Assembly (NCBI GenBank): GCA_977030845.1
Contig: OZ365115.1
Location: 31,744,001 to 31,808,000 of the forward strand
From: Fimbriosthenelais zetlandica
Taxonomy: Eukaryota
DNA length: 64,000 nt
Direction of reading: 5' to 3'
The number at the start of each line of letters is the position of its first letter. Within the stretch, counting starts at the first letter, position 1. The notes beneath the pieces were generated by a model that did no database searches, was not told the DNA's origin, and was given only the letters and a program-made list of their open reading frames with translations. The position numbers and the translations under genes were made by a program. Shown here in pieces: positions 8,699 to 61,738 of this stretch.

Positions 8699-8712
8699 CC
8701 AGAAGATGGCGC
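8699..8712 (+). promoter_or_regulatory. CTCF-consensus motif containing a YY1 core
   Basis: CCAGAAGATGGCGC, 13/14; contains AAGATGGCG. Confidence 0.4.
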
Positions 8713-11247
8713 CTCGTCCCACTGGCCAACTGTGCTGGCCCCCTGTTTTCTTCCGGCGCCAGGTCCCCCGGCTATTGATGACCAAATTATCAGTTAGAAG
8801 ACAGCCTGGACGTTAGCGAGAAAGGGGCAGGGGATGGAGATAACCGGGGAGAGAGGTTCATGCCCTCCACTTCTGAAGAAAGCTCTAATGTACCTCTCAT
8901 CTGCCCCCAAATACAAAGCTACAAATATGTCGGCATAGCTGGTTATATATTGCACTGAATAAAAATAAGGCCACCGGCGTTGAAGAACCATAAAAGTCCC
9001 CATGATCAAATCGAGGTTACTCAAGGATGAAATCTGTGGAAGACCAGCTTTAATGCATTCAGGTTTTCGCTGTGATATTCCATTGACTTCATTGCACCGT
9101 TTCCCCTTTTGGCCATAATTCACACAGCAGGAAGTTCAGGTGGAAAGCGGAGGAACTACTTCCGGGGGTGTATGAATTGATCATTATATAGGCCCTCTCC
9201 CTACTTTCATCTTACTAAATGTACTCATATATCACATAAATATACTATTGATTGTCAACACCAGGCAATTATGTGTATTTATCAACACATATACACAGTT
9301 TACTGTGGCCTTCATACAGGATCTTGGGGTATCAGAACACATGCTACAACTTATATCATTAGTGAAAAATTAGTATAGGTAGTTTAGAGTAGATACATTG
9401 TTGTTGCTAGATTCTGGTAGACTAGTCAGTGAAAACATCTTTTTGGTCTTTTCTGTGGACACCACCAACATCCCACTGGTAGACAGGTAAGTGGTGTTCA
9501 GGAGTAACATGAGCCGTCCTTTCATCTCTCCCCAATACACCTCATCCCACATGCCAGACGTGCGTCCCGCCGTATTAGCACCCCCAACATAGTGATAGGC
9601 TGCTACAATCAATTATGTACAGAATGAGGGGGTATTAGACTTGCTTAAAGCCACAGAAGTATAGGAAAATGTATGCCAAATGTAGCTCAACTCAAGAGAA
9701 AATTTGTATACATGCATCGTTCACAGTTAAGATCCTATAAGAAGATTTGAATCTTGTATATATAAGGAAAATATGTCTGATCAGATAGAATGACATCATT
9801 ATCAAGCCTTTGGCTTGTCTTATATTTCACTGGCCGCATAGAGTACCAGGCTTATCCATTGTGCACAAATTAAGGGGGGCATATACCTATGATGACACAT
9901 GTCACTCAGGTTCAGGGGTCAATACAGTACCTTTTAATTTAATCAGAAAGATACACGCTACTTTTGCATGATGGACGCCACACTTAGAACGTCGTTAGGA
10001 CGAGTGACGGTAATTGACTCACAATCAATGTCGCAAAATAAGCATGAAACCGACATTTCAATGTCGTGAATCATTCAGCGGTATTGGATGATGGGATGCA
10101 AGTGCATGGGAATCTCTAAAAAGCATTGTCCTTTGTTATCATTTTCCGGTCATCATTATGTTAAAGCCCTTGTCCTTGATCCATTGGCGAATTTTCTCCC
10201 TGTAACCGTGTGCGTTGTATAATTTATTTTATATGTATTTTATTTTTCGTTCCTTGGTAACGCCCTTGGGCCACACATAGAGAATTCTATGTGAATGGGG
10301 AAGACCTAAACCATCCCTGGAATGCCCCCTGATTAAACATAGGCAATCCTCTCAACAATGCCTTAGAAATCCACTACAATTAAGCAGAGCACCTTCACCC
10401 TACGCCTTTACCTAATGTGCACATAATATGACCCAAAACACCTAAATAAACCCTTACCCCTTGATGGTCACCTTTAAATCTTGATAAAACAGCCAAGTGT
10501 GACTACAATAGCCCACCCGACCCCCTGTCGGTGATGAAAGGCCCCCAATACTGTTACACCTGACCCCAGACAATTATGACGTCATCGCCCAGACGGTCTC
10601 CCATAGGTTGATTGGTTTTATTTCATTGAGATGGAGTGAGATAGAACCGATCAGTCACCTGATCCATCACCTGACCTCATCACAAAGGTGCTAAACAGGG
10701 AAGATAAAGTTGATCGCTAGTCAGGTAATTTGTTGGTACTTGAGTGTTATATACGAATGGTTTTTGTAATCTTATATAACTTTATAGCCGCCGAAACCAT
10801 CAATATTATTTGCGGTATATGTCCAAATTGAAATTGAGGGTAAACATTATGCGCAGCCTAACTTTCGATTCCAGCTTCAGCAGACCAATGAAGGATACGT
10901 ATCAAAATTAATCTGTTTTAAATCGTTTCCAAACTAGAATTCATTCAACATCTGCTCGTGTCACAAGGTAAATTTAACTCATACTCTTTCCAAAGTGGCA
11001 AATTAAGAGAATCTTTATTTGTGACCTGCGACCCATCACTCTCTTTAATTTCTTCCATACTTAGCCGAACTGTCTTCCCCGACAATGACCAATGACCAGC
11101 TGGTCAGGTGGGCTATGTAATTACTGCACATAAACCTCAAAATACACTGAACAAGGGCAAAGGTTTAATGTATTAGAAAATTAGCCTTGTCATGTCCAAG
11201 CCAAAGATGCTATCTCTCCCCAGTAATGTCAATAAATGATAGGGATT

Positions 11248-58324: not shown

Positions 58325-60114
58325 AAAAGAAGGGATGGATGAAGGGTGGGTCAGAGAAAGGGGAAGAGAATGGAGAGAGGGATGGGGTCGTAAGGACCGA
58401 GGTGGAAAATCTGCCAACGACAATTTCTAAGGGAAGAAAATAAATGGGGAAATAATCAGAATAGTCGGGTTCAGGTTTAATATACCAATTTGAATAAATT
58501 TACACTTTCTTTTAAAATAAACAAATTATTATGAATATACCGTTTTTTGAGATAAAATATCAATGTTATCCCTTGCAATGAATCAATTCACAAAATTGAA
58601 CTTTTCCTATAATAATTCATCAAGAGGCTTGCCTCGGGCAAAGTAATGAAATGGTCCAAAGGAGGGGGGATATAAACATAAATATTTAAAATGTCTCTTG
58701 GGTAGAATTAAAGATACACGTGTCTCGGCCGCGCGGGTCTCTCGTTCTCGTATTGTTATAATGTATAGACATTGGGCGGGGGATTAAAGGAAAGAGCCGG
58801 GGTATGTCGTTCAGCATTATAGGTGACGACATCGGCCGCAGGCAAAGCTTTAGGAATTAAAGGGTAAACCAGGAAATTAAGCTCCATTTCCATATAAAAA
58901 AACCTTTTAATCAGTATAGTTTAAAGATGTAGCCATGAATGTGCATGAAGGCTCTCTTGGAGTTTAAATTCAGCTTTATTTTTCAGATATAATTAACAGA
59001 TAACATTTCGAACTTTTTCGTACCAAATAACCTAAAATCAACTATCTAAAATTAATTAGATCAAAAGACGTTGGTATAATATCTCGGACAAACACTCCCT
59101 GAACGCACAAACATTCCCAGAACGCTATTAACTGCATTCGGATCTTTCTTTTCAAAATGGTTCGGACAGGGGAAGTGTTCAGAGATTTGCCTAATAATAG
59201 CGATCATGAAGATATGTACAAATGTAGTAAAGAATGCCACGGTTGTTTGCGATTAGCAAAACAAAAGAGAATGGGTGTACAGAGGTCCAGAGAAGTAGGA
59301 TGGGAAGAGCAAATACTGTGATTTTTTCTCATGTGAAACATGTGTACGGGATATGAAGAGGAAGTGGTAGTGCTTCCAAATTTTTTTTTGCGCACCTTTG
59401 GATGTCTCCTTCTCACAGACGTTCACGGCGAAAACAGTTGATTGTCAGGGCTTTATATTGATGAATACACCTATATAACCTATTTTTCCCTAACATTTCC
59501 TCCATGATTGTCAAGAGTACACATTATTTTAGGGAAACAATTTTCGAACAAATGCATTATACTTTTGGGATTACAAGGACATAAAAGCCATATGAAACAT
59601 TGGTGGGGGAGGAAATCAACCATTTTTCTACTCTTTTCCCGTGGCCGGGCATTCTCAAATTCCACCCCTATTACTTTACCCCTGGTAAGGACTGCTGCTT
59701 AATGTGCATTTCATTTATATCGATGCGAAAATAATTATCATTACAAATTAATCAAAATTTCAGCGGATACCTGATTCCACGCTTACGTCCCCTAAAGTGT
59801 TTAATGAACTTTAAGACATCACTATGGTTACGGTTTAATATTTTTCCGTATCGTTAAATACAGTCATGTACCCTGTATATTATATGGATAAGTATATAGT
59901 AAGATTTGTTCCGTCTTACAGAAAAATATATCTTCCAGAATATCTTTTCATTTAATAATCTAAAAGCTCCGCAATTCCTACAATGAAAGCCCTTTTTCTA
60001 CATTAAGTTCATCTCAAATTTGGTTTTCTGGACAAAACAAGCGCGAAATTTCCTCAGATACACAAAGAACGGGGTTGAGGGGACAGGCCCCGTAAAGTAT
60101 GTAGTAAGGCCGGC

Positions 60115-60128
60115 CCAGCAGGGGGCCA
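60115..60128 (+). promoter_or_regulatory. CTCF-consensus motif
   Basis: CCAGCAGGGGGCCA, 12/14 with intact core, in a locally GC-rich patch. Confidence 0.45.
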
Positions 60129-60698
60129 AAGTGACATTTCTTGTGAGCTACAGGCGTGACATATGGGCCCCTGGTAGAGCGGGCGGGGAAGTAAGATTCC
60201 CCGGGATTCAGTGCTCGTATCCCCGGCAACCATGGAGAAGCCCTGCCTCTACTATAGGACTTCTTCCCTCGCAGGGCTTCTTTCACAGGGCTCACTATTT
60301 GACATAATTATTGAGGTTATTGGGGGAGGCGGAATAGTAGCCATAATTCCAAATTAAACAACAAAAAATGCATCACATATTTTCTTCACATGTATTACGC
60401 ATTGATGTGATATATGCTAGAATTAGCCAGTATAACCAGCCCTTACTAGGCTAGAATGTGCTGACCAGATAATAAACAATTATATATGCCTAGTCAGTTT
60501 GGGAAAATTGTCTTTGTTCAATAGAGCTTGGTTTGGGAGCTTCAAGACAAGTTGGGTGCTAGCTATGGTTGTCCAAGCCTTCATAGCTCAGTGGTTAGGG
60601 TGTCGCTTTCCCAATTCTCAGGTTCTGAGTTCAAATCGCAGTCCTGCATCTTATTTTCCTACCCGGCTAGGTGGGTTCCCTATGGGACATCGACTGCA

Positions 60699-60729
60699 CT
60701 GCCACCTGGTGTTGCTCGCCAGATGGCGC
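60699..60729. promoter_or_regulatory. Divergent pair of CTCF-consensus motifs (unit 1)
   Basis: Minus ACACCAGGTGGCAG 60712-60699 and plus TCGCCAGATGGCGC 60716-60729; each 13/14 to CCRSYAGRKGGCRS. Confidence 0.6.
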
Positions 60730-60972
60730 CACATCCTAGTGGTCAGAATACAGGCCTGTGCTTGTGTCTCCAGGTGCGCCCAAAGACAATGGTTACCTGG
60801 GATTACATAACTAGCTTATGACAAGTCGGGTGCTAGTCATTAGTGTCCTAGCCTTGATAGCTCAGTATTCAGGGCGTTGGCTTCCCAATTCTAAGGTCCT
60901 GAGTTCGATTCACAGTCATCCCTCTTCTTCTCCTTCCCGTCTAGGTGGGTTCCCTAAGGAACATCGACTGCA

Positions 60973-61022
60973 CTGCCACCTGGTGATTTGCCTAGTTCCG
61001 GTAGTTGCCCGCCAGATGGCGC
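60973..61022. promoter_or_regulatory. Divergent pair of CTCF-consensus motifs (unit 2)
   Basis: Minus TCACCAGGTGGCAG 60986-60973 (13/14) and plus CCGCCAGATGGCGC 61009-61022 (14/14). Confidence 0.62.
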
Positions 61023-61235
61023 CACATCCTAATGGCCAGAATACAGGTCCTGAGTTCGATTCACGGTCATGCCTCTTCTTTTCCTTCCCGGTCAGGTGGG
61101 TTCCCTTTGAGTCTACTTGAGAAGGCTTCATCAGGTGTAAATGGGCTCCACAGCAGTTGCGAAATATTCTTGAGGCGAGAATTGCCATAGACCCAAGATT
61201 AAAGTTATGACCAACGCCATTTTTAAAACATTCAC

Positions 61236-61241
61236 TTTATT
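61236..61241 (-). terminator. Candidate polyadenylation signal of NUP35
   Basis: Minus-strand AATAAA about 500 nt downstream of the stop. Confidence 0.35.
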
Positions 61242-61738
61242 TGTGCTATTAATAACAGTTTATGATCCATTTCAGACACTTTTACAATGTATAAAAATTG
61301 TCCGTGACGTACTGAGAACCCCTACCGTACCACTGACGTCAAATAGCCTACATATAGGCCCACCCATTTCTCAGGCTTTGAAGCCATCTATATCTAGGGA
61401 TAAATTTGCTTTCCATGATTTTTTTTCACAAGAATCTAATGATTCATATTTTTTTTGCTCAAAATAAGACTGATTTTTATAATATTAAAATCTTTTCATG
61501 AGTAATATTAAAGTTTCACAAAAGTCATTTACCATTATCATTCGTTGTTTTTTTTATGTTTTTTTTTTAGGACATGCCTATCTTTTCCTGTAAAACGGAA
61601 GTACATAGTTAAAATAGTTATATTCTTATGCTATTATAATGTACAAGAAAGTATTAGAATTACCTAGTGGTCTGCCCTTATCACATTTACCTCGGTTCGT
61701 GATGACATTACTATTGTATATAATCAGATCTGGTGATA

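What the first reader, a model, noticed from the sequence alone, without database searches (positions are those of the whole stretch)
60546..61106. Tandem tRNA-derived repeat carrying paired divergent CTCF motifs: candidate composite mobile insulator
Seen: each ~274-bp unit has a tRNA-like head with A and B boxes, then about 60 bp later a reverse and a forward CTCF-consensus motif back to back (3-bp and 22-bp spacers). The motifs are retained in both units while surrounding bases have diverged and taken indels. A third partial unit repeats the B box, and a further CTCF match is at 60115. Established: TFIIIC-bound B boxes/tRNA genes and CTCF sites are each insulator elements, divergent CTCF pairs mark domain borders, and rodent B2 SINEs spread CTCF sites. 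Inference: a SINE family or local array packaging TFIIIC and bidirectional CTCF sites into a portable boundary cassette. I do not recognise it as a described family.
Basis: partly seen in the sequence, partly recalled or inferred. Interest (0 to 1): 0.8.

Follow-up and report, generated by a model that had tools for sequence, protein, structure and literature searches.

The report
Old tRNA-derived repeat with CTCF-type words
This is a decayed 2.2-copy piece of a tRNA-derived repeat family of a spiralian animal; each unit carries two opposed near-perfect CTCF-type words, which makes it a plausible but wholly untested repeat-borne CTCF site, not a shown insulator.

Summary
Positions 60546-61106 are two full units and one partial unit of a ~270-bp repeat. 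Each full unit has a pseudo-tRNA head with A and B boxes, then a reverse and a forward CTCF-type word about 60 bp later. The site at 60115 is weak (3 mismatches).

It is not a local oddity. It is an old member (~72% identity) of a family with at least 156 units genome-wide. Younger relatives sit as 2-3-unit blocks between ~940-bp inverted repeats, or in tandem arrays. The unit is not shown to be a SINE. A T4-T6 run follows the head, the window copy has no tail or target duplication, and only one solo relative has a possible 7-bp duplication.

The CTCF reading is plausible. The genome encodes a CTCF orthologue, and the 15-mer consensus is about 28-fold enriched (1112 against 40). However, the whole 80-bp core is conserved, not just the motifs. 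Motif 2 is degenerate in most sampled units. Motif 1 shares a 17-mer with the 3' end of an A-tailed retroposon, and motif 2 also resembles a YY1 site.

No binding, transcription or insulation could be tested.

The parts
60546..60819 (+). Repeat unit 1. It is full length and has a 19-bp deletion between the two CTCF-type words and a ~23-bp insertion in its tail.
   Evidence: It matches family model positions 2-268 at 166.6 bits.
60820..61044 (+). Repeat unit 2. It covers model positions 1-229 and keeps the family-typical spacer between the two motifs.
   Evidence: 179.9 bits.
61045..61106 (+). Partial unit 3. It runs from the B-box region to GGTGGGTTCCCT (model positions ~77-139) and joins unit 2 across a ~120-nt deletion.
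   Evidence: (repeat family D2, 90% identity to unit 2).
60583..60642 (+). Pseudo-tRNA head of unit 1. The A box is at 60584-60594, the relaxed B box at 60629-60637 and a TTTT run at 60654-60657.
   Evidence: (tRNA model 16.9 bits, gathering score 29), and (the minimum-free-energy structure is not a cloverleaf; z = -0.15).
60855..60918 (+). Pseudo-tRNA head of unit 2. The A box at 60858-60866 is degenerate and the relaxed B box is at 60903-60911.
   Evidence: (24.9 bits, gathering score 29).
61054..61062 (+). Relaxed B box of partial unit 3 (GTTCGATTC). A TTTT run follows at 61079-61082.
60698..60712 (-). CTCF-type word 1 of unit 1 (ACACCAGGTGGCAGT), 1 mismatch to the consensus.
60716..60730 (+). 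CTCF-type word 2 of unit 1 (TCGCCAGATGGCGCC), 2 mismatches. It also resembles a YY1 site (AGATGGCG).
60972..60986 (-). CTCF-type word 1 of unit 2 (TCACCAGGTGGCAGT), 1 mismatch.
61009..61023 (+). CTCF-type word 2 of unit 2 (CCGCCAGATGGCGCC), 1 mismatch. It is followed by ACAT, like the genome-wide preferred form GGCGCC-AC.
60115..60129 (+). Weak CTCF-like match (CCAGCAGGGGGCCAA), 3 mismatches. It lies in single-copy GC-rich DNA and is not part of the repeat.

Best explanation
The stretch is an old, truncated fragment (2.2 units) of a family of ~270-bp head-to-tail units.

Each unit reads as follows: a 37-nt leader, a pseudo-tRNA with A and B boxes, a T-rich run, and then a conserved ~80-bp core. 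The core holds a reverse and a forward CTCF-type word separated by about 22 nt. A short tail ends the unit.

The family has been spread through the genome as multi-unit blocks. Younger blocks lie between ~940-bp inverted repeats or form longer tandem arrays. One old solo copy looks like a retroposed insertion.

The two CTCF-type words were inherited from the ancestral unit. This animal has CTCF, and this class of word is strongly over-represented in its genome. I therefore think the most likely activity, if there is any, is ordinary binding of CTCF to the two opposed sites. That would be a repeat-borne CTCF site pair. The B boxes might also recruit TFIIIC.

Shown: the anatomy, the family membership, the motif matches, the CTCF gene and the genome-wide enrichment.

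Inferred: binding (my estimate about 0.4) and boundary activity at this locus (about 0.1).
For: - Anatomy and repeat structure.
- Family: a BLAST search of the genome gave 52 matches at about 72% identity. A sequence-only profile gave 156 matches, and every one of the 150 scored candidates was significant. The pair pattern has 108 hits against 0 in the control.
- The unit architecture recurs in all relatives as a partial unit, then a full unit, then a head.
- Carrier: young copies sit between ~940-bp inverted repeats that begin CAAGGGCCTTCGGCC, with different left flanks. Tandem arrays were seen.
- The window matches the family only at 60551-61102.
- The core is the best conserved well-covered block. 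Motif 1 scores 0.94, the spacer 0.90 and motif 2 0.90, against 0.86 overall.
- CTCF gene: one exon aligns to human CTCF residues 311-371 at 140 bits in a single stretch.
- The 15-mer consensus occurs 1112 times against 40 for the reversed control.
- CCAGATGGCGCC occurs 152 times against 2, in diverse flanks and with a preference for a following A and then C.
- In the five oldest units the motif-2 CpGs are kept 8 of 8 times, against 13 of 27 for other consensus CpGs (P = 0.009). The window is CpG-depleted, observed/expected 0.48.
Against: - No binding, expression or 3D data exist here. No sequencing run was listed.
- Within the window pair, motif retention is not beyond chance (P = 0.15 and 0.09).
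- The whole core is conserved, spacer included. The constraint may therefore serve the element's own propagation.
- Motif 2 has 3 mismatches in the most abundant young units. Only 2 of 70 sampled units have both motifs at 1 mismatch or fewer.
- Motif 1 shares a 17-mer with the 3' end of an A-tailed retroposon.
- The word AGATGGCGCC is enriched in many non-CTCF contexts, some of them YY1-like.
- The CpG test is small. Units 1 and 2 are not independent, and the consensus CpGs may not all be ancestral.
Confidence: 0.75

Rival explanations
1. The unit is a selected, portable boundary cassette, built as a SINE or array, that combines TFIIIC-bound B boxes with a bidirectional CTCF pair. On this view the present copy insulates neighbouring domains.
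For: - Both kinds of element are present in each unit.
- The family is dispersed.
- The genome has CTCF and is enriched for the motif.
- The motif-2 CpGs are retained in old copies.
- The pair is best preserved in the oldest copies, namely window unit 2, L003 and L042.
Against: - The A and B boxes are no better conserved than average.
- The A box is intact in one unit only.
- The young, most numerous units have lost motif 2, so the pair is not maintained by the family.
- No tRNA gene or tRNA-grade head exists in any copy.
- No chromatin or Hi-C data could be reached.
Confidence: 0.1
2. The likeness to CTCF sites is incidental. The conserved core serves the element itself. Motif 1 would be a retroposon 3'-tail word recognised by a partner reverse transcriptase, or by the carrier's transposase. 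Motif 2 would be a site for a YY1/Pho-like or other factor. The two words might also be the arms of an inverted repeat.
For: - The 17-mer TGCCCTGCCACCTAGTG occurs at about 250 further places as ...AGCCAAAATCGAT[17-mer]TATGAAG(A)n, followed by unique DNA. That is the 3' end of an A-tailed retroposon.
- Conservation extends beyond the 15-mer, into GACTGCAC and across the spacer.
- AGATGGCGCC is enriched (1310 against 78) with many AAGATGGCG-type upstream contexts.
- The two words pair in the minimum-free-energy folds.
Against: - The fold z-scores are not significant (-0.35 to -1.3).
- Units that differ in one arm show no compensating change in the other (alignment).
- Both words are one step from forms that recur in unique DNA genome-wide.
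- An element-centred origin of the words does not exclude CTCF binding; the rodent B2 case combines both.
Confidence: 0.25
3. The motif matches are chance hits in an ordinary local tandem duplication.
For: Within the two window units alone, the identical runs over the motifs are not significant.
Against: - The window has 4 matches at 1 mismatch or fewer against 0.13 expected.
- The same two words, in the same order and orientation, occur in relatives on many contigs.
- The pair pattern has 108 hits against 0 in the control.
Confidence: 0.02

Closest known systems
Rodent B2 SINE and other lineage-specific mammalian SINEs that carry and spread CTCF sites. This rests on my own knowledge of Bourque et al. 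2008 and Schmidt et al. 2012. Related open papers seen are PMC7520972 and PMC7156512.
   Same: A tRNA-derived repeat unit whose own consensus contains a CTCF-type word, copied to many places in the genome.
   Different: - Here there are two opposed words per unit.
- The unit occurs in head-to-tail blocks and between inverted repeats, not as single A-tailed insertions.
- A T-run follows the head.
- The copy number is in the hundreds, not 10^5.
- The host is a spiralian.
- No binding data exist.
tDNA and TFIIIC (ETC) insulators, and tRNA-gene clusters at domain borders. This rests on my own knowledge of work in yeast and mammals.
   Same: A and B box-bearing tRNA-like sequences arranged in tandem.
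   Different: - The heads are pseudo-tRNAs below the Rfam threshold, and ARAGORN calls none.
- The strict B box is absent.
- TFIIIC binding is untested.
SINE-derived or MITE-derived tandem repeats and satellites of invertebrates. The mollusc SINE literature surfaced (PMC4758252, PMC4824008).
   Same: A short tRNA-related unit found both dispersed and in tandem arrays.
   Different: No sequence match to a described family could be tested. There is no Repbase or Dfam tool here, and full-text search for the core words found only unrelated primers.

Membership tests
tRNA-derived SINE | A tRNA-related 5' head with internal Pol III A and B boxes | tested here: met
   The tRNA model gives 16.9 and 24.9 bits, below the gathering score of 29. 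The A box is exact in unit 1, and the relaxed B box is present in all three units.
tRNA-derived SINE | Single dispersed insertions that start at the head and are bounded by target-site duplications | tested here: inconclusive
   The window copy starts in the 37-nt leader and ends inside a unit, with no duplication. One solo relative, L003:1497-1758, starts at the head and is flanked by GACACAT on both sides. Most relatives are multi-unit blocks.
tRNA-derived SINE | A 3' tail that is A-rich, a simple repeat or LINE-derived | tested here: not met
   No tail is present at 61106 or at the unit ends of relatives. The only link is a 17-mer shared with the 3' end of an A-tailed retroposon.
tRNA-derived SINE | A body that Pol III can transcribe, with no internal T-run terminator before the 3' end | tested here: not met
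   TTTT lies 17 nt after the B box in units 1 and 3. T5-T6 runs sit at the same place in relatives. How many Ts stop Pol III in this animal is unknown.
CTCF binding site | A match to the core consensus CCASYAGRKGGCRSY | tested here: met
   The four sites have 1, 2, 1 and 1 mismatches, and the window total is above chance. The consensus itself was recalled from memory, not taken from a database.
CTCF binding site | The organism encodes CTCF | tested here: met
   Exons at G000:C19, about 38.51 Mb. One exon aligns to human CTCF residues 311-371 at 140 bits in a single stretch.
CTCF binding site | Occupancy by CTCF in vivo | not testable with these tools
   No ChIP data are available, and no sequencing run was listed.
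Insulator or domain boundary | Enhancer blocking, or a local minimum of contact insulation | not testable with these tools
   No Hi-C data or functional assay is available.
TFIIIC/tDNA insulator | A B box bound by TFIIIC | not testable with these tools
   Only the relaxed B-box word is present. Its conservation equals the unit average.
Tandem repeat or satellite | Head-to-tail copies of one unit | tested here: met
   There are 2.2 copies here. Tandem Repeats Finder reports nothing at its score threshold. Relatives form arrays with start-to-start spacings of about 0.7-0.9 kb.

The most novel reading that the evidence does not exclude
Repeat families have seeded a sizeable share of the CTCF sites of a spiralian genome. 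The families in question are this tRNA-derived unit, an A-tailed retroposon that ends in a CTCF-type word, and 60-bp satellites of CCACTAGGTGGCAGC. Some old copies with a preserved opposed pair, such as this one, would then have been kept as two-way boundaries. That would be repeat-driven CTCF-site expansion outside vertebrates.
Probability: 0.12. Interest if true: 0.7.

Novelty: new variant of a known kind. Interest (0 to 1): 0.4.

Why it matters
Evidence that CTCF shapes genome folding in spiralians is almost absent. A 2023 review names the enrichment of CTCF sites at squid TAD borders as the only study (PMC10658181).

This genome encodes a CTCF orthologue. It also shows about 28-fold enrichment of the vertebrate-type consensus, and several repeat families carry the word. 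It would therefore be a good place to ask two questions: whether CTCF sites are spread by repeats outside mammals, and whether opposed pairs act as boundaries.

The locus itself is only one decayed copy. Its value is as a pointer to the family and to the genome-wide signal, not as a shown functional element.

Tried and rejected
- **Protein coding:** ORFs of about 100 aa cross the units in several frames, but they have no significant Pfam match, and the units differ by a 19-bp indel.
- **Functional tRNA gene:** ARAGORN finds none in the window or in 42 family loci. Rfam matches stay below threshold.
- **Structured RNA or hairpin in the core:** fold z-scores run from -0.35 to -1.3.
- **Other known RNA family:** Rfam returned only weak, far sub-threshold matches at E > 2.
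- **Expression:** no sequencing run was listed.
- **Relatives outside this genome:** the pair pattern has 0 hits in metagenome contigs. The 78 hits to an 18-mer match at word level only.
- **Literature search for the core words:** only unrelated primers came up.
- **Species identity:** the HSP70 search gives spiralian best named hits at about 77%.
- **More family loci:** As a result, the A-tailed retroposon that shares the 17-mer and the full structure of the inverted-repeat carrier were not resolved.
- **Tandem Repeats Finder:** it missed the array.

Full report
**1. What is there**

Reading 59900-61500 and the repeat search show a direct repeat. Unit 1 is 60546-60819, unit 2 is 60820-61044, and a partial third copy is 61045-61106. 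The start-to-start spacings are 274 and 151 nt.

Units 1 and 2 are 84% identical over 213 aligned positions. They differ by a 19-bp indel between the two CTCF-type words. Tandem Repeats Finder does not report the array.

Each full unit begins with a tRNA-like stretch. The Rfam tRNA model gives 16.9 bits (60583-60642) and 24.9 bits (60855-60918) against a gathering score of 29. ARAGORN calls no tRNA gene in the whole window. The heads do not fold better than shuffled sequence (z = -0.15 and -0.88).

The A box TRGCNNAGTGG is exact only in unit 1 (60584-60594). The strict B box is absent. The relaxed form GWTCRANNC is present three times, at 60629, 60903 and 61054. TTTT follows in units 1 and 3.

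**2. The CTCF-type words**

I scored against CCASYAGRKGGCRSY. This consensus is recalled from memory; no JASPAR matrix was available.

| Position | Strand | Mismatches |
|---|---|---|
| 60698-60712 | - | 1 |
| 60716-60730 | + | 2 |
| 60972-60986 | - | 1 |
| 61009-61023 | + | 1 |

At 1 mismatch or fewer the window has 4 matches against 0.13 expected from shuffles, and 3 of them are in the array. At 2 or fewer it has 12 against 3.4.

It lies in single-copy DNA.

The 60115 site is weak. For the two window units alone, the identical runs over the motifs (29 and 22 nt) are not beyond chance (P = 0.15 and 0.09).

**3. It belongs to a family**

A BLAST search of the window's own genome (447 Mb, 79 contigs) gives 52 matches at about 70-75% identity. 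A sequence-only profile built from 11 diverged units gives 156 matches. Every one of the 150 scored candidates is significant, so 156 is a lower bound. The two window units are among the lower-scoring full-length matches. A pattern joining both words has 108 hits against 0 in the reversed control.

All relatives share one architecture: a partial unit, a full unit of ~268 nt, and one or two further heads.

A young subfamily (93-99% identity among copies) forms a ~730-bp block of units. The block sits between ~940-bp inverted repeats that begin CAAGGGCCTTCGGCC and have different left flanks. It also sits in tandem arrays with start-to-start spacings of about 0.7-0.9 kb. Some of the right flanks are themselves repeated, so the carrier's true ends are not settled.

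The window matches the family only at 60551-61102. The array is an isolated, truncated old copy.

**4. Is it a SINE?**

The head with its A and B boxes fits a SINE. Three features do not:
- A T4-T6 run directly follows the head in most units. It would be expected to stop Pol III before the core.
- Units are joined head to tail through a conserved 37-nt leader.
- The window copy has no tail and no target duplication.

One solo relative, L003:1497-1758, starts at the head and is flanked on both sides by GACACAT. This hints that an older form was retroposed.

I therefore call it a tRNA-derived repeat family whose mode of spread is mixed and only partly resolved.

**5. Are the motifs more conserved than the rest?**

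| Segment | Mean column conservation |
|---|---|
| Whole unit | 0.86 |
| Motif 1 | 0.94 |
| Spacer between the motifs | 0.90 |
| Motif 2 | 0.90 |
| A box | 0.86 |
| B box | 0.86 |

Motif 1 is the best well-covered block. Its conserved stretch runs on 5' into GACTGCAC. The conserved thing is thus an ~80-bp core, of which motif 1 is the peak.

Of the sampled distinct units, 49 of 70 keep motif 1 at 1 mismatch or fewer. Only 3 of 80 keep motif 2 at that level. The abundant young unit reads CCGCCAGGCGCCGCC, which has 3 mismatches. The near-perfect pair survives only in old copies: window unit 2 and L042.

In the five oldest units the two CpGs of motif 2 are kept 8 of 8 times. Other consensus CpGs are kept 13 of 27 times (Fisher P = 0.009). 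The window's CpG observed/expected ratio is 0.48. This fits protection from methylation decay. The sample is small, and units 1 and 2 are not independent.

**6. Is CTCF a sensible reader in this organism?**

The best named hits of an intronless HSP70 gene are spiralians: Lingula, nemerteans, molluscs and Owenia, at about 77%.

Neighbouring exons read like CTCF fingers 3-11. One exon aligns to human CTCF residues 311-371 at 140 bits in a single stretch. Other multi-finger proteins reach only about 35-40 bits per stretch. So CTCF is encoded.

| Word | Hits | Reversed control |
|---|---|---|
| 15-mer consensus | 1112 | 40 |
| CCAGATGGCGCC | 152 | 2 |
| AGATGGCGCC | 1310 | 78 |

For the 15-mer, base composition predicts about 26 hits. 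Part of the excess lies in 60-bp-period arrays of CCACTAGGTGGCAGC. Most listed hits are scattered.

The CCAGATGGCGCC hits have diverse 3' flanks. By my own count of the 100 listed, about 75 are followed by A and about 56 by AC. The window sites read GGCGCC-ACAT.

The class of word is clearly favoured in this genome. A review states that CTCF arose in the bilaterian ancestor, and that squid TAD borders are the only spiralian evidence so far (PMC10658181).

**7. Complications**

The 17-mer around motif 1 (TGCMCTGCCACCTRGTG) has 360 hits against 0 in the control. Most of them are TGCCCTGCCACCTAGTG at scattered single places without a B box upstream.

The context of those places is ...AGCCAAAATCGAT[17-mer]TATGAAG(A)n, followed by unique DNA. 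That is the 3' end of an A-tailed retroposon. Motif 1 may therefore be, in origin, a retroposon tail word.

The AGATGGCGCC hits have mixed upstream contexts. These include AAGATGGCG forms that resemble YY1 sites and several recurrent forms. Motif 2 may therefore have another reader.

The two words can pair as a hairpin in the folds, but not significantly (z = -0.35 to -1.3). No compensating changes are seen in the alignment.

**8. Verdict**

The anatomy is real and non-random. This is a tRNA-derived, dispersed repeat whose ancestral unit carried an opposed pair of CTCF-type words, in an animal that has CTCF and favours such words.

That it is a SINE, that TFIIIC or CTCF bind it, or that it insulates anything, is untested. 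The family does not maintain the pair.

The closest known case is the CTCF-bearing B2 SINE of rodents. The differences are the paired words, the multi-unit inverted-repeat or array form, the low copy number and the spiralian host.

I did not check it, and it is not among the profile hits listed.

Noticed in passing
G000, about 250 scattered places, for example C1:6570478-6570520 and C25:17947968-17948010 (not in the window): An A-tailed retroposon ends ...AGCCAAAATCGATTGCCCTGCCACCTAGTGTATGAAG(A)n. Its last 17 nt before TATGA are a CTCF-type word, shared exactly with 'unit 0' of the young tRNA-like family.
   Followed up: partly
G000:C1:2553421-2554011, 2577049-2577487, 2626428-2626880, 2637677-2637753: Arrays of about 60-bp period in which every unit holds the exact CTCF consensus CCACTAGGTGGCAGC.
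   Followed up: no
G000 genome-wide: The 10-mer AGATGGCGCC occurs 1310 times against 78 for the reversed control. It has recurrent upstream forms TACAATAG, ACTGTTAG and TTGCCAAG. Either several repeat families or a second factor, YY1-like, uses this word.
   Followed up: partly
L069 (G000:C19:38508689-38511805), + strand: CTCF orthologue. Exons encoding fingers about 3-11 are readable at L069:~850-990, 1175-1357, 1501-1617, 1856-2060 and 2470-2640.
   Followed up: partly
L017, L027, L028, L030 (for example L017:347-2985): A repeat of about 2.6-2.9 kb in which ~940-bp inverted repeats beginning CAAGGGCCTTCGGCCACTAAGC flank the ~730-bp block of tRNA-like units. The left flanks differ between copies. 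Some right flanks are themselves repeated, so the true ends and any target duplication are unresolved.
   Followed up: partly
L004, L009, L010, L018 (for example L018:217-1225): A separate tandem repeat of about 400 bp (homologous to L028:2-369) lies next to the tRNA-like units at several loci.
   Followed up: no
window 60070-60300: A single-copy GC-rich island about 250 bp upstream of the array. It holds the weak CTCF-like site at 60115. It has no Rfam or Pfam match, and its fold z-score is -0.94.
   Followed up: partly
window, + strand: The exact A-box word TRGCNNAGTGG occurs 4 times on the + strand and 0 times on the - strand of the window. Only one occurrence is in this array, so other tRNA-derived elements may be present.
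   Followed up: no
window 8699-8713: This is the only other CTCF-type word at 1 mismatch or fewer in the window (CCAGAAGATGGCGCC, + strand).
   Followed up: no
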